A DNA stretch of 63,740 bases, counting the filler, from Octopus bimaculoides (Eukaryota): NCBI RefSeq assembly GCF_001194135.2. It is 6 parts of 6 records of this genome, joined end to end, with 100 filler letters (N's around TTAATTAATTAA, not from the genome) between each part and the next. Parts side by side here need not be neighbours in the genome. Positions count along the whole stretch, not along the records: positions 1 to 10,880 come from NW_026437400.1; 5 more parts are not named here. One strand, written 5' to 3'. Both the position numbers and the translations under genes were made by a program. Position 1 is the first letter of the stretch, and each line of letters starts with the position of its first letter. Shown here in pieces: positions 1,248 to 10,880 of the stretch. The notes beneath the pieces were generated by a model. The model searched no databases. It was not told the DNA's origin and worked only from the letters and a program-made list of their open reading frames with translations.

Positions 1248-1716
1248 CATTTGTCTATCTATCTACCAATCTATATATATATATATNNNNNNNNNNNNNN
1301 NNNNNNNNNNNNNNNNNNNNNNNNNNNNNNNNNNNNNNNNNNNNNNNNNNNNNNNNNNNNNNNNNNNNNNNNNNNNNNNNNNNNNNNNNNNNNNNNNNNN
1401 NNNNNNNNNNNNNNNNNNNNNNNNNNNNNNNNNNNNNNNNNNNNNNNNNNNNNNNNNNNNNNNNNNNNNNNNNNNNNNNNNNNNNNNNNNNNNNNNNNNN
1501 NNNNNNNNNNNNNNNNNNNNNNNNNNNNNNNNNNNNNNNNNNNNNNNNNNNNNNNNNNNNNNNNNNNNNNNNNNNNNNNNNNNNNNNNNNNNNNNNNNNN
1601 NNNNNNNNNNNNNNNNNNNNNNNNNNNNNNNNNNNNNNNNNNNNNNNNNNNNNNNNNNNNNNNNNNNNNNNNNNNTGCACATGCATACACACACACACAT
1701 ATATATATATATGTAA

Positions 1717-2840: not shown

Positions 2841-3439
2841 ATTGATGGCAATATAAATCAGTAAGAAATTACAACATAAACACGAACAACTTGGCTAAAT
2901 GTTTATTAAAATGAAATGTTTGCTTCCTTTTTTTTTTATCTTCCTCTTGTTTTTAGTTTATCATTTGTAATGTATGTATCAGTTATTTGCCTCCTAAAAT
3001 TAAAGAAAGAATAGAAAAATATATCGTTGCAAAAGGGTTTAAAAAAATATAAGTTGACAAGAATGACAGTAACAGCAATAAGTTCTGAAGTTTAATACAG
3101 ACATATGTGCAGGTTGTTTAGCATGAAATTGCAGAATTCTCATCTGTCGCCTACGGCAGCTGAGACAATGATATATCCATACACACACATGTTTGTGTGT
3201 GTGTGTGCGTGTATTGTATTTGTATATATATACATATACGTGTGTTGTCTGGGGGGGGGGCGTGCGTGTGCGAGTATCTACGAAAAATATACAAAATCTG
3301 GGGCAACTTTTCTCCTTTTGAAACCCAGTCCACATTAATCGAGTGTCTATAACTGAAACCCCTTGTTGACTGAAACCCCTTGTTGCAATATATCTGAGGG
3401 CTGACAAGCGTGTGCTTCTAATAATCCAACAATGTTTCC

Positions 3440-3670
3440 ATGATTAGGAACGATGTGCTAGCAAAATCGTTAGACCGCCGCACACAATAAGCGGCATTTC
3501 TTGAGGCTTTAGCTTCTACGTTCAACTTCCAGCGGGATCGAATTTGCCTTGTACCCTTTCGAGGTCAATAAGATTGGTTGAACACTGGTTGAGCACTGGT
3601 GTAGATGTAATCGACTAGACACCCCCCCACCCTTAATATTTCAAGCATTTTGCCTATAGTAGAAAGAATT
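3440..3670 (+). mobile_element. SINE family B copy
   Basis: Shares head and body (GTCAATAAGATT...CACTGGTGTAGATGTAATCGACT) with 33775-33985 and 46880-47080. Confidence 0.65.
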
Positions 3671-3820
3671 TTTTTCTTTTCAGCCCACATTTACATTGTA
3701 TGTTACTGTCATTGCAGGATTTTGTCATTTTCAGAATACTTTGTTATCTCTTGATATGTTCATATAGGCAGTATAGCCTGTGAGGGTGTTGCTCTTGTTA
3801 TTAACCGAATCCAAGTATAA

Positions 3821-4030
3821 AAATGTCACAGGTAAAAAAAGTCACAGTAGAAATGTGACGGTAATAAAGTCACAGGAGTTTGTCCTGATCCCTCAAATTA
3901 ATTGTGACTTTTTTACTTGTGACATTTTTCTAGCCAAAATTGTGACTTTTTTACCTGTGACATTTTTCCTAGCCAAAATTGTGACTTTATTACTATGACT
4001 CTTTTCCTGTGACTTTATTACCAGTCACCC
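3821..4030. mobile_element. Fold-back/subterminal-repeat DNA transposon end (GTCACA/TGTGAC motif array)
   Basis: 3821-3845 and 3941-3965 are reverse complements apart from one A-run length difference. There is a tandem duplication of about 39 bp at 3901-3977. Confidence 0.6.
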
Positions 4031-4880
4031 ATTAATCAACGAGAAAATGTCCAAAATATTTGAGCGGGCTACTCCATTCAGAATTAATGATTCTTTTGAA
4101 AATGCACCGTTGCATGTCACAATATTTTACGTATATCACATCTCGTTCGATTGGCTGACTTGCTGCTTCATCACTCAAGAAAAATGCTACGAAGCTATCC
4201 GTGACAGCTTCTACCTCTACCATTACTTAACCTGTGCAGAGTGTCACTTAATGAGATGTTTCATATAACAAGGTTGGGCAGTTACCCTGTGAGGATTAGC
4301 TTCTGCAGACGTTGAGTATTTGCGATTTCAGACAGGAGGGCAATGTGCGGCATCTGCTCTAGCTTCTCTTTAATGGGAGCTTAACATTTGTGAGGGATCC
4401 TTTGATTAGAAAACTCCAAGTGCCGATGCAGTTGACACAGTCAATACTGCACAGAAATCTCACTGTCTACAACTTATTTCCAATGAAGAGAAGCTTTCCT
4501 CAACGTAATTCAGAGCAATCGTGTGTCAACGAAAAGAACGCGTTAATATTTGTCTGGCATATGACAAATAGCAGCGGAAATTCTTCAAACAATATATTCA
4601 CCTTCCATATACGGACAGAATACAACGAAGTTCCACGTAACAATAGTCAGATGGCCTTGTCATGGGTGGAATACCTTCGTTCATTTGACGACTGGGTCGC
4701 CTGGATCTCTACAACAAAGACAGCATTCAACAAGAATGACGTGTCCATGTGGAAAACGCTACAGAGTTGCATTGCATGCAAGGAATAGAAACTAAATAGT
4801 TCTACATGATATCGGTTTCTTTTCTCAAGTACAATATTATGGCGTATTATTTTAGGTTAGAATATTAGAATATGCATATA

Positions 4881-4911
<31 letters not shown>

Positions 4912-5014
4912 CCTTTAACCAAATAAATCGACACTAGTACGTACTTATGTTAAGCCTGATACTAATTCGATTGGTTTTTATTTACCGAAGACTAGGTTGC
5001 TGACACACACACAT

Positions 5015-5064
<50 letters not shown>

Positions 5065-5067
<3 letters not shown>

Positions 5068-5222
5068 CGATGAGTTTCATTCAGTTTTCGTGTACCAAAT
5101 CAACTCACAAGGTCCGAGGTTATAATAGAAGACACTCGCTCAAGGTGGCACGCAGTGGGACTGAACCTGCAATCATATGGCTAGAAAGCAAGCTTCTTAC
5201 CACACTTGCCACGTATGCGCCA
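5065..5222 (-). mobile_element. SINE family A head
   Basis: Reverse complement matches GTGGTAAG..GCTT...GGTTCAGTCCCACTGCGTGCCACCTTG. Confidence 0.75.
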
Positions 5223-5260
5223 ATACACATGCACACACACACTCACACACGTGTGCGCGC

Positions 5261-5342
5261 GCGTACGTGAGCGACCTTTTCTTCATTCCGGAGTTCGCGC
5301 GCGTCGTGTCCTTCGTTCGGGTGTACGCGTGTGGCCTAACCT
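5261..5342 (-). pseudogene. Degenerate copy of the TPE-repeat block of the 811-aa ORF
   Basis: Ungapped alignment of 5261-5340 to 8461-8540 gives 63/80 identity. It translates RLGHTRTPERRTRRARTPE*RKGRSRT, with an in-frame TGA at 5285-5283. Confidence 0.8.
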
Positions 5343-5980
5343 TTCTATTATAGTCACAATAGGTAAAATGTTTTTGGGTGGTGACCTAGTTGATTAAATC
5401 GACTCCGGTGCTCAATTTATACCTCTTCTATCGTTCCCCCACCCCACGAAAGGACGAATTTCAGGATCACGAAAGGACAAACTGCAGGATATATTGAACT
5501 TCTAAAGGCAAATTCACTGCTGCTTTAGCAGAGAAATTCTCTCTCATGTTAATAGATCAAAAAACACCATAACTGCCCAGTTTTGCCCACTACGGGTTTC
5601 CTACACGCAGTGTTACTGGCTCTTTAGCCTTCCTGAATGGGAAATACCAAGGAAAGGTAACTCTGTGAAGATTTAAAACCGTAGCTCTAAATGAAAAGAA
5701 AACAGTCAACAACATTCACTGCATTTTGCTGTCCGCAAAACAAGGTTGAGGCATAAGCGAACTTCAATTTATTTAAAATATGTTTGTCATATATTATAAT
5801 TTCTAAATTCAAACGTATTCTGAGTAAACCGTCGTTTGCTTATGCCTAAGCAATGCTTGTTGTAGTTACTGCTCAATTTATGTATGTATATATGTATGTA
5901 TATTTATGTATAATATGAAACGGTACATATATATGTGTGTGTGTGTGTGTGTGTATGTGTTTGTATGTATATATACATGC

Positions 5981-6069
<89 letters not shown>

Positions 6070-6086
6070 TATATATATATGGATGT

Positions 6087-6196
6087 ATAAGAAATAGTGG
6101 TAAAACAAGGCATCAGTGTTTGCTAGAAATAACAGTCGACAACTGTAGGACGATTTTCAGCAAAGTTTGATGCCTTGTTGTACCACTATTTCTTAT
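6087..6196. repeat. 110-nt inverted repeat (hairpin)
   Basis: AGAAATAGTGGTAAAACAAGGCATCA pairs with TGATGCCTTGTTGTACCACTATTTCT at 25/26, with further inner pairing. Confidence 0.85.
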
Positions 6197-6260
6197 TTAT
6201 AATTCTACCTTCACGGTGCTTTATTTGGGTAGAAAATGATACTATTGTACTACAATGATA

Positions 6261-6305
<45 letters not shown>

Positions 6306-6392
6306 GTGTGTGTGTGTGTATGATACTATTGTATTACAATATTTAAAATATATATATATACATATGTGTGTGTGTGTGTGTGTGCGTATATA

Positions 6393-6437
<45 letters not shown>

Positions 6438-6483
6438 ATACATACATACATATATGTGTTTGTGTGTGTGTGTTTGTGTTTGT

Positions 6484-6700
6484 GTGTCTGTGTTTGTCCG
6501 CCCATCATCGCTTGGCAACCGATGCTGGTGTGTTTACGTCCCCGTAACTTAGCGGTTCGGCAAAGAGAGACCGATAGAATAAGTACTAGGCTTACAAAGA
6601 ATAAGTCCTGGGGGGGGGGGTAGATTCGATTCGACTAAAGGTGGTGCTCCAGCATGGCCGCAGTCAAATGACTGAAACAAGTATAAAAGAGTAAAAAAGA
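6484..6700 (+). mobile_element. SINE family A 3' half
   Basis: Closely matches about 54985-55180 (AACCGATGCTGGTG...GGTGCTCCAGCATGGCCGCAG..AAATGACTGAAACAAGT). Confidence 0.85.
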
Positions 6701-6712
6701 GAGATAACATAT

Positions 6713-9148
6713 TTAACGGTGGCACTTACCTCGTTTTGATCCACAGCATAGCATTTTTTTTAAGGGAGATTTTTTGGGTTTTGCATTGTCTATCAATTCT
6801 TTGGCTTTCCTTTCTTCCTCCTCAATATCAACCTGTAGAGATTTCTCGTCAGTTGGAATTTCTACTATGATTGGCTCTTCTTCTTCATCCTCCATGTAGT
6901 CAGGTGACGTTGAAGTATCTACCAATCGTGTGTCCTTTGTCTCGGTTGTGGCATCTTCTGTTTCTCTTATTATCACGCTGTCTTCTTCGGCATTTGATTG
7001 CGGTTCGTCGGCATTTGATTGGGGATAGCTATATAAATGTCTGTACGGTTCCAATTTTTCGTCACGATCCTTGAAATTGGCCGTGTCCGTACTTTCGCTA
7101 TACACACATGTTTCACAAACAGAATCGTCATCAAATACTTGGTCAATTTTGGCGAAAGGAAGTGGTGGAACATCAACGTTTAAATCAAAATCAAGAGGGA
7201 AAGGTGTACCTTGGGCTATGCTACCTCCAAATAATTCTTTATTCTGCTTCCCTTTATGTTTGCAAGTAGGATCCCAACAGAGTGCTAGGTCAACACAAAC
7301 ATTTCCTACAACAGTCGGTGCGTTTTTCTTGTCTCCTCCTAATGGGGTTTCAAAAGTATAAGTTTTCCTTCCAACCGAATCAGTAATTTTAGCGAAATCT
7401 TGCGCAGCTGACAGATTTGTATCGGCTTGATTTGTACCTCGACAGTGTTCGCAGACGACTGGTTTTTTGCATCCGCATGGCTTGATAACTTCATGATGGT
7501 GGTGGTGGTGGTCATGATGGTGGGGATCATGAAGATCATGATGGTGGTGATGCTCATGATCATCATGATGATGGTGATGATCATGATGGTGATGATCATC
7601 ATGATGGTGATGATCATGATCATGATGGTGATGATCATGATCATGATGGTGGTGGTGCTCAGGTGGTGGAGGCTCTTGCTGAGGATCATGATGATGATGA
7701 TGGACAACGGGGTGATAATGCGGCACATGGTGGCAGTGTACAGGTGGTGGAGGTTTCCCACAGCATTCATCGCACAATGTCGGCATTTCCAATTCACATC
7801 TCATTTTGTTGGTCGGTCTAAAAGAGAATATATTACTGCACCTTTTGCATCGTCTGAATACAGTTTCGGCAAAATGAATCTCTTCATAGAGAAGCGAAGT
7901 GAAGGGGTCGAATTTTGAAGATTGTTCTTTCCTCTCTTTCATTGCTTTGTACTTACATTTTGTTGCACTGCATAATGGCTGTGCTGCCTCTATCTCTTCT
8001 TGATTTGGCCATCTAGTCGGATCAGAATGGCATTTAACTGTGTAAGCACAGTGATGGCAGGGGTGTTCAATAATCTTTTCAGGTTGTGGTGGAGGAGGAG
8101 GACTATAAATGCAATGCACATGGTGTTTAGGGTGGTGGCAGGGATGTTCTTCAAACTTATCAGGTGCAGGAGGAACTTCCGGCTCATCTTCTATTTCCAC
8201 TTCATCAATGCGACGGTGGCATCGAAGGGCCTCTTCACACGCTTGACACAAGAAGTCCGATTCCTCGACCTGCGATTCCACATCTTTAGTAATTTCTTTA
8301 GTAGTAATCGGTACGTGTTCATATATTACTTTTCCACAACAACATTTCCTCTTGACCAACTTCGTTTCTGGTGTATGTGGACGTCTTATCTCTGCGTCTG
8401 GCGTACGCTTGCGCTCTGATCTTCCTTCTGGGGTACGCGCACGGCTCGATCTTGATTCTGGCGTATGAGTGCGGCCTTTTCTTGATTCTGGAGTACGCGC
8501 GCGTCCTGTCCTTCGTTCTGGGGTGCGCCCACGGCCTGATCTAGATTCTGGCGTTTGAGAACGGCTTGACTTTGACTCTGGCGTACGTGAACGGCTCGTC
8601 TTTCCACTGTCTATTACTATATGGCCATGTCTAAGACAATGTTCACAAATGAAGTCGGTTACTACAGCTTTAGCATCAGTCTGTTCCGAAAATGGACACG
8701 TATCTGCTTTAGGTCTTCCGCACTTTTGGCACAAATTGGCCTTCTTCGTGTTCAGCTGTAACTTAGTGGTGGTACCGTGTATGTGGTGACAACAAGGGTC
8801 TATGATAAGCTTCGTCGTTTCTACTTTACGGGGCTTTTCCTTCTCCTCCGCAATGGAAATGTTTATCTCACCTTGAGCTCCTCTGGCACCCTCCGGGCTA
8901 ATCGAGCATCTGGTTGCACCGTCGGGCTCCTCGTAAACTGACAATGTCATATTCTCGGGAGTTCTGACGCAAACCCGTGAATCCTCGTAAACATGTTCTC
9001 CTCTTCCGGATATCTGAATCGGAGAGATGGGAGGGGTATAACCCTTTTTGGTTGGATATTTTAATATAACTTTCTGCTTGTCCTCATCTACAGCAACCTG
9101 AGGTTGGCCCGTATAATGTAGGGCCACTTTTGCGCTGTCCTGGGGCAT
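6713..9148 (-). CDS. Uncharacterised 811-aa Cys/His/Pro-rich protein with TP[E/D] decapeptide repeats and a poly-His/Asp tract; single ORF/exon
   Basis: 2436-bp stop-free frame, visibly more GC-rich than its flanks and free of dinucleotide microsatellites and SINEs. The peptide is complex and non-random. The nearest in-frame upstream stop is 9 codons before the ATG. No family recognised. Confidence 0.9.
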   Translation of the reverse strand: MPQDSAKVALHYTGQPQVAVDEDKQKVILKYPTKKGYTPPISPIQISGRGEHVYEDSRVCVRTPENMTLSVYEEPDGATRCSISPEGARGAQGEINISIAEEKEKPRKVETTKLIIDPCCHHIHGTTTKLQLNTKKANLCQKCGRPKADTCPFSEQTDAKAVVTDFICEHCLRHGHIVIDSGKTSRSRTPESKSSRSQTPESRSGRGRTPERRTGRARTPESRKGRTHTPESRSSRARTPEGRSERKRTPDAEIRRPHTPETKLVKRKCCCGKVIYEHVPITTKEITKDVESQVEESDFLCQACEEALRCHRRIDEVEIEDEPEVPPAPDKFEEHPCHHPKHHVHCIYSPPPPPQPEKIIEHPCHHCAYTVKCHSDPTRWPNQEEIEAAQPLCSATKCKYKAMKERKEQSSKFDPFTSLLYEEIHFAETVFRRCKRCSNIFSFRPTNKMRCELEMPTLCDECCGKPPPPVHCHHVPHYHPVVHHHHHDPQQEPPPPEHHHHHDHDHHHHDHDHHHHDDHHHHDHHHHHDDHEHHHHHDLHDPHHHDHHHHHHEVIKPCGCKKPVVCEHCRGTNQADTNLSAAQDFAKITDSVGRKTYTFETPLGGDKKNAPTVVGNVCVDLALCWDPTCKHKGKQNKELFGGSIAQGTPFPLDFDLNVDVPPLPFAKIDQVFDDDSVCETCVYSESTDTANFKDRDEKLEPYRHLYSYPQSNADEPQSNAEEDSVIIRETEDATTETKDTRLVDTSTSPDYMEDEEEEPIIVEIPTDEKSLQVDIEEEERKAKELIDNAKPKKSPLKKMLCCGSKRGKCHR

Positions 9149-9182
9149 CTTGACAAGATGATATTGACAGATTTATATAAAT
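9149..9182 (-). promoter_or_regulatory. Ambiguous 5' boundary: TATA-like palindrome (ATTTATATAAAT, 9171-9182) or splice acceptor TCATCTTGTCAAG|ATG
   Basis: Both motifs are directly visible and cannot be distinguished without transcript data. Confidence 0.3.
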
Positions 9183-10880
9183 GCGCGTGTATATATGTAT
9201 ATATATGTATATATACAATATATTTATAGAGATAGATCGATATAGGTATATAGGAAATGTCTAGAATATATCAGTAATTGCTTGTGTATATATTTAATTA
9301 TTCTTTTCAAAGAAATGTCAGTTCATCTGTGCTTGAAAAAGTAGTTTCAATAACACTTTGTAATATGTCGAGCAATTTTCGTACGCTTTTCTATGTCGAT
9401 ATGTACATAAAAATATAGATATGCATGTATGTGTGCGTCTTTTAGTATATAAATATATTTATATGTGCATATATGCTATGGAGAAAGACAAAGGGAGAAG
9501 GGGAGAGAAAGAGAGAAACCTTCCAAAAAACAGCGACAGGAGAGATAAAGATAAAGGTTTAAACAGTAGGAGAGAGTGATAAATATTACTTGTCTAGTCA
9601 CCCTCACCCTCTTTCTCTCCCTCTATTTATGTATGTGTATATAAGCTATATATATATGTGTGTATATATATGTGTGTATATACATATATATATATATATA
9701 GCTTATATACAAGCTATATATATATATATAAATACATATATATATATATATATATATAATATTTTGTATAACACCTTCAGTCTGAAGATTGATTCGTATA
9801 AGAGAAGTTGGTAAACTGTTTTGTGTTAAAGATTTTTCACGGATAAAGCTTGATGAGGTTGCTTAAAGGTAAATTTAAACGAGAAGAACAAAAGCACGCG
9901 TGCAAATGTACACGTATATATAAGTGTGTATATCTGCGAGTATGTGTGTTTGTAAGTAGGAGGAAGCGGAAACTGTTTCGTATTGCAAATTAAAGACGAT
10001 GAAGTAGGAACGGAAAAAGGAAGAAAAATTAAGAATATAATTGAGGATTTCTTCGATCACATGCTGTCATTTTTTCTTCCTCTTTGCGTATAATCCAGGC
10101 TATTTGGCGGAACTTTTTTTTTTCCTTTTGGTACTTCTTTTCCTTATTCCTTTCTCTCAAAATTTTAGGATTCTATGCGAAAACAACAACGCAAAACAGA
10201 TCATATAAACGAACAATTCAAAACTAAAACGATTTTCTTTGTTATCTACTGATACTTTTTTACCACAGTCTTTAGTGGATATAATTCAGTTAAACACTCA
10301 TATTACTTCGTAACTCTTTTGTTCCTTATAACTACACATACATTTATGAAATTATATATATATATATACATATATTATGTACCAAAATATTCTCTATTTT
10401 CAACTGCTAAATATATATATATATATTCTATTAATTTCTACACTTGATAATGAAAGTTACTGCAAAAATCAAAATGGAATATTACGTCATAAATATGCAA
10501 TGATGAGAACAGATCATGTGACTGAGGATAAAATGTTTACAGAATAAAATTGTTATATATATATATAAATGAAGGTACGTAAATGTATAAACCAACACGC
10601 GCACACACCGAACACATCGTATGCACACAGACAACCTCAAACATACAGCTAAACACATACACACATAGATTATAAACGGAGAAGTGAGAGAAGAGAAAAT
10701 AAAATAAAATGAGTGTGTAAACTACACACACACACACACACACATGATATATATATATATTTGAAGAAAAGCAAATTTTATTCACCAAATCTCTTGATTT
10801 TGTTTTTGTTTATTTTTTTACCCTACCAGATTCTGGTGCCTCAAACATTTTAAGTACATTTTAATCTTTTGACTAAATCT

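What the first reader, a model, noticed from the sequence alone, without database searches (positions are those of the whole stretch)
6713..9148. Orphan 811-aa single-exon protein with modular metal-binding/phospho-switch architecture
Seen, in order: a non-repetitive N-terminus; Cys/His clusters (CCHH, CQKCG, CEHCLRHGH); eight TP[E/D] decamers; KRKCCCGK; HPCHH motifs twice; CxxC pairs (CKRC, CDEC, CEHC, CETC); a 40-His tract; an acidic segment; and a basic di-Cys end (KKMLCCGSKRGKCHR). I recognise no family, and it lacks the Gly-His-Gly-rich repeats of squid beak His-rich proteins and the Met/Tyr motifs of reflectins. Inference: a lineage-specific metal-chelating or structural protein. Cys/Pro-rich intronless genes of this style are often sperm-tail or cuticular structural proteins. 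The C-terminal basic CC could be palmitoylated.
Basis: partly seen in the sequence, partly recalled or inferred. Interest (0 to 1): 0.72.

Follow-up and report, generated by a model that had tools for sequence, protein, structure and literature searches.

The report
Octopus-only Cys/His-rich orphan gene
The long reading frame is a real, expressed gene found only in octopuses. It has two exons, not one, and encodes a water-soluble, probably disordered protein full of conserved cysteine pairs and histidines that most likely binds zinc or similar metals, but its function is untested.

Summary
The 811-codon ORF (6713..9148, minus strand) and nearly all listed motifs are real. It is a genuine gene. 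The frame is intact in three taxa, dN/dS is 0.24-0.27, and a spliced, polyadenylated mRNA exists in an octopus RNA dataset.

It is not single-exon. A conserved donor (AG|GTAAGT, exon ends at 6730) splices over a 3,736-nt intron to a tiny terminal exon starting at 2993 (GA GGC AAA TAA). The product is 809 aa ending ...MLCCGSKRGGK.

'Orphan' holds. An exhaustive HMMER search of 1.84 billion representatives found only octopus orthologues. One is Octopus sinensis LOC118768644, annotated 'uncharacterized' and truncated to 222 aa. Pfam, PDB sequences and two AlphaFold runs gave nothing.

The protein has no signal peptide or membrane helix, so a secreted beak, sucker or cuticle role is unlikely. All 16 CxxC cysteines are invariant. 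The 103-130-aa tract stays His-rich in four taxa while its sequence turns over.

Best reading (inferred): an intracellular, largely disordered, multivalent Zn/transition-metal-binding protein with a proline-directed phospho-repeat and a possibly acylated basic di-Cys tail. A nuclear-speckle scaffold and a sperm structural protein remain open. Interest is moderate.

The parts
6730..9148 (-). Coding exon 1: ATG at 9148-9146 (Kozak-like A at -3), 2,419 nt, residues 1-806 plus the first base of codon 807
   Evidence: ORF. Intact and collinear in O. sinensis contig L003 and in contigs L001/L002. dN/dS 0.24-0.27. No AG acceptor before the ATG in L001.
8801..9148 (-). Residues 1-116: non-repetitive, best-conserved N-terminal region with alternating beta-strand-like patterns
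   Evidence: 92% identity to the distant orthologue with omega 0.11; omega 0.21 versus O. sinensis. No Pfam hit. AF2 shows weak strands only, pLDDT about 35-45.
8609..8800 (-). Residues 117-180: Cys/His cluster DPCCHH ... CQKC-x24-CEHC-x2-H-x-H, a candidate zinc-ribbon-like site
   Evidence: Motifs. C119, C120, C140, C143, C168, C171, H174 and H176 are invariant. Only sub-threshold Pfam hits: Paired_CXXCH E=0.006, zinc knuckle, double zinc ribbon.
8363..8608 (-). Residues 181-262: eight tandem decamers, consensus [GS]R-x-R-T-P-E-S-R-x, net basic (24 K+R), with one TP site per unit
   Evidence: 30-nt DNA period and exact 10-residue TP[ED] spacing. Seven units in P0001. Omega is 0.5-0.9 with low dS. 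Weak Spt5-CTD resemblance, E=0.24, below cutoff.
7739..8362 (-). Residues 263-470: KCCCGK, CQAC, two EHPCHH units, poly-Pro, CKRC-x13-C-x7-CDECCGK
   Evidence: All CxxC cysteines are invariant. Omega 0.14-0.25.
7484..7738 (-). Residues 471-555: His/Asp-rich tract (50 His in 85 aa) encoded by slippage-prone CAY/GAY repeats
   Evidence: TRF arrays at 7491-7661. The tract is 103-130 aa with 30-55 His in four taxa, but its partner residues change from D/E to P to PHCHH repeats.
7049..7483 (-). Residues 556-700: CGC-x5-CEHC, LCWDPTCKH, CETC; conserved non-repetitive region
   Evidence: Conserved in the most distant orthologue, P0013.
6782..7048 (-). Residues 701-789: acidic segment ending in a predicted helix (EEEERKAKELIDNA)
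   Evidence: 28 D+E versus 8 K+R. Helix 775-787 is the only stretch with pLDDT above 50 in that part of the AF2 model.
6730..6781 (-). Residues 790-806: basic tail KPKKSPLKKMLCCGSKR with a conserved di-Cys
   Evidence: LCCGSK is identical in all four taxa (M/I varies just before it).
6724..6731 (-). 5' splice donor AG|GTAAGT (exon ends at 6730, phase 1)
   Evidence: It is the only AGGTAAGT in the window on either strand. It is conserved in L001, L002 and L003, while the in-frame stops are not homologous and similarity ends right after it in L001/L002.
6713..6729 (-). Read-through tail of the ORF ((G)KCHR*): intronic, not part of the spliced product
2994..6729 (-). Intron, 3,736 nt, rich in microsatellites and interspersed repeats
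   Evidence: GT...AG boundaries. The orthologous intron in O. sinensis is about 6.7 kb. SINE-like copy at about 6485-6695.
2890..2993 (-). Terminal exon: GA GGC AAA TAA (stop at 2985-2983), about 90-nt 3'UTR, AATAAA at 2907-2902; the 3' end is approximate
   Evidence: The acceptor TTTCTTTAATTTTAG| and the coding tail are identical in O. sinensis, whose annotated CDS ends exactly at this TAA. The region is 94% identical versus about 86% background. mRNA contig L004 joins exon 1 to this exon and ends about 12 nt after the AATAAA.
9149..9287 (-). Conserved upstream blocks (9149-9194, including TATATAAAT at 9179-9171, and 9247-9287): 5'UTR and/or promoter, role unresolved
   Evidence: Alignment with L001/L002.
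5261..5328 (-). Dead 68-nt copy of the RTPE-repeat coding DNA inside the intron (..RTPERRTRRARTPE*RKG..)
   Evidence: 84% identical to ORF nt 621-688, E=2e-15. The orthologous copy in O. sinensis carries the same stop.

Best explanation
Shown:
- This is a real, transcribed, two-exon protein-coding gene restricted, as far as the data reach, to octopuses.
- It is the orthologue of Octopus sinensis LOC118768644.
- Exon 1 (9148..6730) carries all but the last 8 coding bases (the rest of codon 807 and two more codons).
- A phase-1 intron (6729..2994) joins it to a short terminal exon (2993..~2890).
- The product is 809 aa and ends ...KKMLCCGSKRGGK.
- The protein is very hydrophilic, has no signal peptide or membrane helix, and gets no confident fold prediction. 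It is therefore taken to be intracellular and largely disordered.

Inferred mechanism:
- The eight invariant CxxC pairs, with flanking Cys/His (CCHH, HPCHH, CCG[KS]), form several small zinc-knuckle or zinc-ribbon-type sites strung along a disordered chain.
- The 100-130-residue His-rich tract adds many low-affinity sites for Zn2+ or other transition metals. Selection acts on its His content, not its sequence.
- The protein would then act as a multivalent metal buffer, or as a scaffold whose compaction or assembly depends on metal.
- The eight basic [GS]RxRTPE decamers are likely substrates of proline-directed kinases. Full phosphorylation would add up to sixteen negative charges (about two per phosphate) and cancel much of the segment's positive charge, which could act as a switch.
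- The conserved basic MLCCGSK tail may be S-acylated for membrane tethering, or may be one more metal site.
For: Gene reality:
- ORF.
- Full-length orthologues with frame-preserving indels.
- dN/dS 0.24-0.27 in all three pairs, and 0.11 in the N-terminus versus the distant species.

Splicing and transcription:
- A unique, conserved donor.
- Identical acceptor and coding tail in O. sinensis, with the RefSeq CDS ending on that TAA.
- The exon-2 region is 94% identical versus about 86% background.
- A spliced, polyadenylated mRNA contig from the octopus meta-transcriptome SRR3401912.

Orphan status:
- Only octopus sequences plus unrelated TPE-type repeat proteins among 1.84e9 representatives.
- No Pfam or PDB hit.

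Intracellular and disordered:
- Max KD 0.91 and GRAVY -1.07.
- pLDDT 34-35 in both AF2 runs.

Metal binding:
- CxxC count of 8 versus 2 expected.
- 16 of 16 CxxC cysteines invariant, and 33 of 39 Cys invariant.
- The tract keeps 30-55 His in four taxa despite sequence turnover.

Phospho-repeat:
- Exact 10-residue TP[ED] period, with 7-8 units in all full-length orthologues.
Against: - No metal binding, phosphorylation, acylation, localisation or tissue expression has been measured. All functional steps are inference from composition and conservation.
- Cys conservation overall (85%) is not significantly above background (73%; Fisher p=0.13).
- Low pLDDT may reflect the 2-3-sequence alignments rather than disorder.
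- The best-conserved part, residues 1-116, has almost no Cys or His and is unexplained by the metal hypothesis.
- An RS-like repeat plus His repeats also fits a nuclear-speckle protein (PMC2644819).
- Transcript evidence covers only the region from about residue 450 to the 3' end. The RefSeq model in O. sinensis annotates only the last 222 aa.
Confidence: 0.55

Rival explanations
1. Nuclear-speckle or RNA-processing scaffold. The His repeats and the RS-like RTPE repeat would target the protein to nuclear speckles. The CxxC knuckles would bind RNA or partner proteins, and phosphorylation of the repeat would control partitioning, as for SR and SRRM proteins.
For: - Runs of 5 or more His occur repeatedly.
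- In human cells, a repeat of six His suffices for speckle targeting, and most poly-His proteins are nuclear (PMC2644819).
- The SR/RSRTP-type basic repeat has a weak Spt5-CTD resemblance.
- There are basic clusters (KRK, KPKK).
- Zinc-knuckle-like sub-threshold hits.
Against: - No RRM, KOW, PWI or other RNA-processing domain.
- In the two more distant taxa, the His runs are largely replaced by poly-Pro or PHCHH units.
- The conserved basic di-Cys tail points to membrane or metal rather than the nucleus.
- No NLS was tested.
Confidence: 0.2
2. One reading: a germline structural protein, for example in the sperm tail or head. It would be a fast-evolving, Cys/Pro/His-rich protein cross-linked by zinc or disulfides in spermatids.
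For: - Cys, Pro and His richness.
- Rapid turnover of the repeat regions, and omega about 0.25, higher than for typical housekeeping genes.
- Almost all of the coding sequence lies in one exon.
- Taxonomic restriction.
Against: - There are no tissue data at all.
- The gene is not intronless.
- The strongly acidic segments and the conserved non-repetitive N-terminus are unlike protamine- or ODF-type proteins.
- The only transcript seen comes from a library whose tissue I could not establish.
Confidence: 0.12
3. Membrane-tethered signalling or cytoskeletal adaptor. The basic MLCCGSK tail would be dually palmitoylated, resembling the MLCC motif of GAP-43 (from my own knowledge). The rest would be a disordered, phospho-regulated docking platform, with metals incidental.
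For: - LCCGSK next to 9 K/R in 22 residues is identical in four taxa.
- Hydrophilic, disordered body.
- TP phospho-repeat.
Against: - The motif is near the C-terminus, not the N-terminus.
- CCG[KS] also occurs internally at 270 and 462, which suggests a generic Cys motif.
- This reading does not explain the invariant CxxC pairs or the His tract.
Confidence: 0.08
4. Secreted structural biomaterial (beak, sucker or cuticle) of the His-rich kind.
For: His richness, and cephalopod-specific structural His-rich proteins do exist (PMC9068888).
Against: - No signal peptide or hydrophobic segment.
- Gly is only 3.8%, with no GHG-type repeats.
- His-rich beak proteins were found only in decapodiforms, not in O. 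bimaculoides (PMC9068888).
- No sequence similarity to anything outside the family.
Confidence: 0.02
5. Chance or decaying ORF, or an unspliced single-exon gene that ends at 6713.
For: - The read-through frame is open to a stop in every genomic copy. An intron-retaining isoform ending GK(CHR) cannot be excluded.
- RefSeq annotates only 222 aa in O. sinensis.
Against: - An ORF of more than 800 codons kept open in three taxa at dS 0.3-0.6, with omega about 0.25.
- The stops are not homologous, while the donor is conserved.
- Spliced mRNA has been observed.
Confidence: 0.03

Closest known systems
Octopus sinensis LOC118768644 (XP_036371384.1, UniRef100_A0A7E6FUY2), 'uncharacterized protein'
   Same: It is the orthologue. 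It is syntenic across the whole window at about 86% nucleotide identity. The protein is 86% identical, with the same donor, acceptor and GGK* ending.
   Different: The database model covers only the last 222 aa, starting at an internal Met that the window species lacks. The O. sinensis contig actually holds an intact 833-codon frame. No function is attached.
[quoted passage not shown]
   Same: It is a highly charged protein that combines His-rich and acidic repeats with a cluster of Cys-X-X-Cys motifs thought to bind metal (PMC6171002). It is a functional analogue for ion buffering by a disordered His/acidic/Cys protein.
   Different: - HRC has a 27-residue signal sequence and is luminal; this protein has none.
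- There is no sequence similarity.
- The repeat units differ (HRHRGH plus acidic versus H/D runs).
- HRC has no TPE decamers.
Poly-His / RS-domain nuclear-speckle proteins (e.g. SRRM-type; Spt5 C-terminal repeat)
   Same: His runs of at least 5-6 residues, and a basic Ser/Arg/Thr-Pro tandem repeat likely to be phosphorylated by proline-directed kinases (PMC2644819).
   Different: No RNA-binding or other defining domain. The Pfam Spt5-CTD match is far below cutoff (12.4 versus 25.4 bits). The His runs are not conserved as runs in the distant orthologues.
Metallothioneins and other small Cys-rich metal buffers
   Same: CC, CxC and CxxC motifs flanked by Lys, Gly and Ser (CCCGK, CGCKK, CCGSK).
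   Different: This protein is 809 aa with 5% Cys, versus roughly 60 aa with about 30% Cys (metallothionein figures are from my own knowledge). It is rich in His and aromatic residues, and it has no Pfam metallothionein hit.
Squid histidine-rich beak proteins and reflectins
   Same: They are cephalopod-restricted, compositionally biased proteins.
   Different: Both of those families were tested and this protein is not a member. There is no signal peptide, no Gly/His/Ala repeats and no Met/Tyr reflectin motifs. HBPs are absent from octopus (PMC9068888).

Membership tests
Orthologue group of O. sinensis LOC118768644 | High full-length similarity in a syntenic position | tested here: met
   86% aa identity. 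The whole window is collinear with contig VCDQ01005149.1.
Orthologue group of O. sinensis LOC118768644 | Same exon-intron structure (phase-1 intron 8 nt before the stop) | tested here: met
   Donor, acceptor and GAGGCAAATAA are identical. The same junction is spliced in mRNA contig L004.
Squid histidine-rich beak proteins | N-terminal signal peptide (secreted) | tested here: not met
   Residues 1-30 have mean hydropathy -0.57, and the maximum 19-residue KD is 0.91.
Squid histidine-rich beak proteins | Gly/His/Ala-rich repeats and sequence similarity to HBPs | tested here: not met
   Gly is 3.8%. No hit outside the octopus family in the exhaustive search. HBPs were not found in O. bimaculoides (PMC9068888).
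Reflectins | Met/Tyr-rich reflectin repeat motifs | tested here: not met
   Met 0.9% and Tyr 2.1%. No Pfam hit.
Metallothionein | Small size, about 30% Cys, few His or aromatic residues, family profile match | tested here: not met
   809 aa, 5% Cys, 9.5% His. No Pfam match.
[quoted passage not shown] | Signal sequence, HRHRGH-plus-acidic 29-residue repeats, and sequence similarity | tested here: not met
   No signal peptide and no such repeats. No HRC-like hit in the exhaustive search. HRC features are from PMC6171002.
Spt5 C-terminal repeat / SR-type proteins | Profile match above the curated cutoff, together with NGN/KOW or RRM domains | tested here: not met
   PF12815 scores 12.4 bits versus a cutoff of 25.4. 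No other domain.
Zinc ribbon / zinc knuckle domains | Profile match to a curated zinc-finger family | tested here: inconclusive
   Only sub-threshold hits on residues 117-180: Paired_CXXCH 16.6/20.6 bits, zf-CCHC_3 and DZR. The CxxC pairs are invariant.
Zinc ribbon / zinc knuckle domains | Tetrahedral Zn coordination by four Cys/His | not testable with these tools
   The AF2 models are too poor (pLDDT about 35). Metal analysis or a solved structure is needed.
S-palmitoylated polybasic di-Cys proteins (GAP-43-like motif) | Conserved CC next to a basic cluster | tested here: met
   LCCGSK is identical in four taxa and flanked by K/R.
S-palmitoylated polybasic di-Cys proteins (GAP-43-like motif) | Actual S-acylation and membrane association | not testable with these tools
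   An acyl-exchange assay is required.

The most novel reading that the evidence does not exclude
An octopus-specific gene family that arose or diverged beyond recognition within octopods. It would encode a new type of intracellular, phospho-switchable, high-capacity zinc/transition-metal sink or metal-driven condensate scaffold, possibly tethered to membranes by its acylated tail. Its conserved 116-residue N-terminal region would be a previously undescribed small beta domain.
Probability: 0.2. Interest if true: 0.6.

Novelty: new variant of a known kind. Interest (0 to 1): 0.36.

Why it matters
Cephalopod genomes hold many lineage-restricted genes of unknown role, and few have even a correct gene model. 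Three things follow from this one:

- The structure is now corrected and transcript-supported: two exons and 809 aa.
- The public O. sinensis model is shown to be truncated by about 610 residues.
- There is a testable hypothesis: multivalent Cys/His metal binding with a phospho-repeat.

If the protein proved to be a major zinc or copper buffer, or a metal-dependent scaffold in a particular octopus tissue, it would be an example of a new gene supplying a physiological function. Copper would be of interest because octopus blood uses haemocyanin. Without expression or biochemical data it remains one interesting orphan among many.

Tried and rejected
- **Pfam, whole protein and five segments.** Only sub-threshold hits.
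- **PDB sequence searches, phmmer and a 4-sequence profile.** Only His-tag and low-complexity noise.
- **AlphaFold2, full length and residues 1-180.** Mean pLDDT was 34 and 35, so no fold search was run, because it would be meaningless.
- **Rfam and ARAGORN on the window.** No tRNA. All 'miRNA' matches are below gathering score and lie mostly on TA/CA microsatellites (a few fall on the coding His-tract repeats at about 7520-7650).
- **Search for a long continuation exon downstream.** The long open segments are microsatellite translations.
- **A tempting 58-nt mini-intron.** GTAAGT...TTGTTTCAG|TC ATT TGA would give '..KR-VI*'. I rejected it because its acceptor belongs to a SINE-like insertion that O. 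sinensis lacks at this site.
- **Identifying the runs.** SRR11869385 and SRR11869394 were not found in the literature. SRR3401912 was identified as an octopus meta-transcriptome.
- **Word-indexed protein searches were erratic.** The whole-protein query missed P0004 and P0013. The N-terminal query found nothing, not even P0001. Negatives from that tool were therefore discounted in favour of the exhaustive search.
- **Exact look-ups.** Neither the 811-aa nor the 809-aa product is in the collection, so the window's own species and annotation were not identified.
- **TATATAAAT at 31 nt upstream of the ATG.** It is conserved but too close to the ATG to be an ordinary TATA box with a normal 5'UTR. 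I left it unresolved.
Full report
**Observation.**
The window holds an ATG-to-stop ORF of 811 codons at 6713..9148 on the minus strand. It sits in AT-rich, microsatellite-laden eukaryotic DNA with an assembly gap at 1287-1675.
- Eight TP[E/D] at an exact 10-residue period (T189 to T259), encoded by a 30-nt DNA repeat.
- HPCHH at 335 and 362.
- CCHH, CQKCG, CEHCLRHGH and KRKCCCGK.
- Eight CxxC, where composition-preserving shuffles give 2.0 +/- 1.3 (3 of 5000 shuffles reach 8).
- A His tract of 50 His in 85 residues.
- An acidic stretch (28 D+E versus 8 K+R in 701-789) and a basic di-Cys tail.

**It is a real gene.**
- A word-indexed search found one full-length relative, P0001/P0003, from Logan assemblies of SRR11869385 and SRR11869394. 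It is 78% identical and collinear from the first Met to the last Lys.
- The exhaustive HMMER search led to P0004 on a 21.5-kb NCBI contig of Octopus sinensis, L003. L003 is syntenic with the whole window at about 86% nucleotide identity, non-coding DNA included. It carries an intact 833-codon frame.
- Nei-Gojobori dN/dS is 0.27 (window vs O. sinensis, dS 0.30), 0.24 (window vs P0001 species, dS 0.51) and 0.26 (the third pair). It falls to 0.11-0.21 in residues 1-120.
- All indels keep the frame.

**It is not single-exon.**
- The ORF ends ...AAA CGA G|GTAAGTGCC ACC GTT AA. AGGTAAGT occurs only once in the window on either strand, and it lies exactly here.
- The donor is conserved in all genomic orthologues, and in P0001's species it is a perfect AAG|GTAAGT.
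- The in-frame stops are not homologous: TGA in that species lies where the window has TGC. Similarity ends immediately after GTAAGTG.
- The O. sinensis RefSeq model XP_036371384.1 splices from this donor to an exon 6.7 kb downstream that reads GA GGC AAA TAA. The annotated CDS ends on that TAA.
- The window has the identical acceptor (CTTTCTTTAATTTTAG|) and the identical 11 nt at 2993-2983. An AATAAA follows at 2907-2902.
- This region is 94% identical between the two species, against about 86% for the surroundings.
- A C-terminal-only search found P0013 on contig L004 from SRR3401912. A virome paper describes that run as the octopus meta-transcriptome of Shi et al. (PMC11662614).
- L004 aligns to window 7531-6728 and then jumps to 2966-2891. 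Its junction is ...AAGCAAG|GTTCCAAATAA, and it ends about 12 nt past the conserved AATAAA. It is therefore a spliced, polyadenylated mRNA.
- The window's gene model is: CDS exon 1 at 9148..6730, a phase-1 intron at 6729..2994 (3,736 nt), and a terminal exon at 2993..~2890. The product is 809 aa and ends ...KKMLCCGSKRGGK.
- The ATG appears genuine. An in-frame stop lies nine codons upstream (read), A is at -3 in all three taxa, and no AG acceptor precedes the ATG in the distant species.
- The 5'UTR and promoter are unresolved. Conserved blocks at 9149-9194 and 9247-9287 include a TATATAAAT only 31 nt from the ATG.

**It is an orphan.**
- hmmsearch of the two-species profile against 1.84 billion representatives gave nine hits. 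One is P0004. The other eight match only the TPE-repeat columns; the four I read (P0005-P0008) are unrelated tandem-repeat proteins.
- Pfam (whole protein and five segments), PDB sequences (single and profile) and two AlphaFold2 runs (pLDDT 34 and 35) gave nothing usable.
- No paper mentions the O. sinensis locus.
- Known members therefore come from four octopus-type sources only. The library does contain cephalopod RNA-derived proteins, such as P0013, so the absence of squid hits is meaningful but not conclusive.

**What the sequence says about function.**
- The protein is very hydrophilic (GRAVY -1.07) and has no hydrophobic segment (max 19-residue Kyte-Doolittle 0.91). This excludes a signal peptide or membrane helix and makes a secreted beak, sucker or cuticle role unlikely.
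- Squid His-rich beak proteins are in any case confined to decapodiforms (PMC9068888).
- All 16 cysteines of the eight CxxC motifs are invariant across three taxa. Those in the C-terminal third are also kept in P0013.
- Their spacing suggests several small Cys4 or Cys/His zinc sites on a flexible chain: CQKC-x24-CEHC-x2-H-x-H; CKRC-x13-C-x7-CDEC; CGC-x5-CEHC; C-x4-C-x-H ... CETC. Only sub-threshold zinc-finger profile hits support this.
- The tract between CDEC and CEHCR is 103-130 residues with 30-55 His in all four taxa. Its partner residues change from Asp/Glu (window, O. sinensis) to Pro (P0001) to PHCHH repeats plus poly-Pro (L004). The encoding DNA is slippage-prone. This points to selection for His content rather than sequence, as expected for a metal- or pH-responsive tract.
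- The basic [GS]RxRTPE decamers are kept at 7-8 copies with one TP site each. They show low dS and omega 0.5-0.9. They look like a multisite target of proline-directed kinases.
- LCCGSK is identical in all four taxa. However, CCG[KS] also occurs at residues 270 and 462, so it may be a metal motif rather than, or as well as, an acylation site.

**Best explanation and rivals.**
- I commit to an intracellular, largely disordered, multivalent Zn/transition-metal-binding protein with a phospho-switch repeat. It would act as a buffer or a metal-dependent scaffold.
- The gene model and orphan status are shown. Every functional step is inferred.
- The main rival is a nuclear-speckle or RNA-processing scaffold. 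His repeats act as a speckle-targeting signal in human cells (a repeat of six suffices), and the repeat is RS-like (PMC2644819).
- A testis or sperm structural role and a palmitoyl-anchored adaptor remain possible.
- HRC of vertebrate sarcoplasmic reticulum is the nearest functional analogue: His/acidic repeats plus a CxxC cluster (PMC6171002). HRC is luminal with a signal peptide and unrelated in sequence.
- The most conserved part, residues 1-116, is explained by none of these readings.

**Novelty and score.**
The existence of the gene is already recorded, as an N-terminally truncated 'uncharacterized' model in O. sinensis. Nothing is known about it, and it belongs to no described family. 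Its features resemble known kinds of compositionally biased Cys/His metal-binding proteins. I therefore rate it a new variant of a known kind, of moderate interest (0.36), with a 0.2 chance of the more novel reading.

Noticed in passing
window 6485-6695, 2570-2850, 2240-2540 (all minus orientation); partial copy at 5100-5230: There are three copies, plus a fragment, of a roughly 200-270-nt interspersed SINE-like repeat. Two copies begin TCAGTCATTGGACTGCAGCCATGCTGG...; the third differs at three of those bases. One copy sits 35 nt after the splice donor and is absent at that site in O. sinensis. The copy just after the poly(A) site is shared with O. sinensis. ARAGORN finds no tRNA-like part.
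   Followed up: partly
window 5261-5328 (minus strand), inside the intron: A 68-nt dead copy of the RTPE-repeat coding DNA, 84% identical to ORF nt 621-688. It reads ..RTPERRTRRARTPE*RKG.. with an in-frame stop. An orthologous copy with the same stop exists in the O. sinensis intron (L003 10019-10147), so it predates the split of the two species.
   Followed up: yes
L003 5075-7573 (O. sinensis contig VCDQ01005149.1): The RefSeq model XP_036371384.1 (222 aa) starts at an internal Met. An intact in-frame ORF of 833 codons, orthologous to the whole window protein, lies directly upstream. The public model appears truncated by about 610 residues.
   Followed up: yes
window 1287-1675: An assembly gap of 389 N, flanked by (TA)n and (TG)n microsatellites.
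   Followed up: no
window 5920-6070, 6265-6500, 9620-9760, 990-1290 and others: Dense TA/CA/TATG microsatellites give dozens of sub-threshold Rfam 'miRNA' matches (mir-297, mir-466, mir-5014 and others). They also produce long spurious ORFs on both strands, and all of these are artefacts.
   Followed up: yes
window 3900-4008: A 38-nt tandem repeat (2.8 copies, 90% matches) inside the intron, with related 14-15-nt arrays at 3818-3876 and 3980-4021. Its nature is unknown.
   Followed up: no
window 8363-8608 versus orthologues: The RTPE-repeat DNA has an unusually low synonymous divergence (dS 0.14-0.15, versus 0.3-0.8 in neighbouring regions) together with omega of 0.5-0.9. This could reflect concerted evolution among units or a constraint at the nucleotide or RNA level.
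   Followed up: no
window 9149-9194 and 9247-9287: Upstream blocks are conserved with the distant orthologue contigs, and the second block is 93% identical. The first includes TATATAAAT only 31 nt from the ATG, too close for a standard TATA-to-start-site-to-5'UTR arrangement.
   Followed up: partly
tool behaviour: The word-indexed protein search missed clear relatives. P0004 and P0013 were missed with the full query, and P0001 was missed with the N-terminal and C-terminal queries. Its negative results should not be relied on for low-complexity-rich queries.
   Followed up: yes
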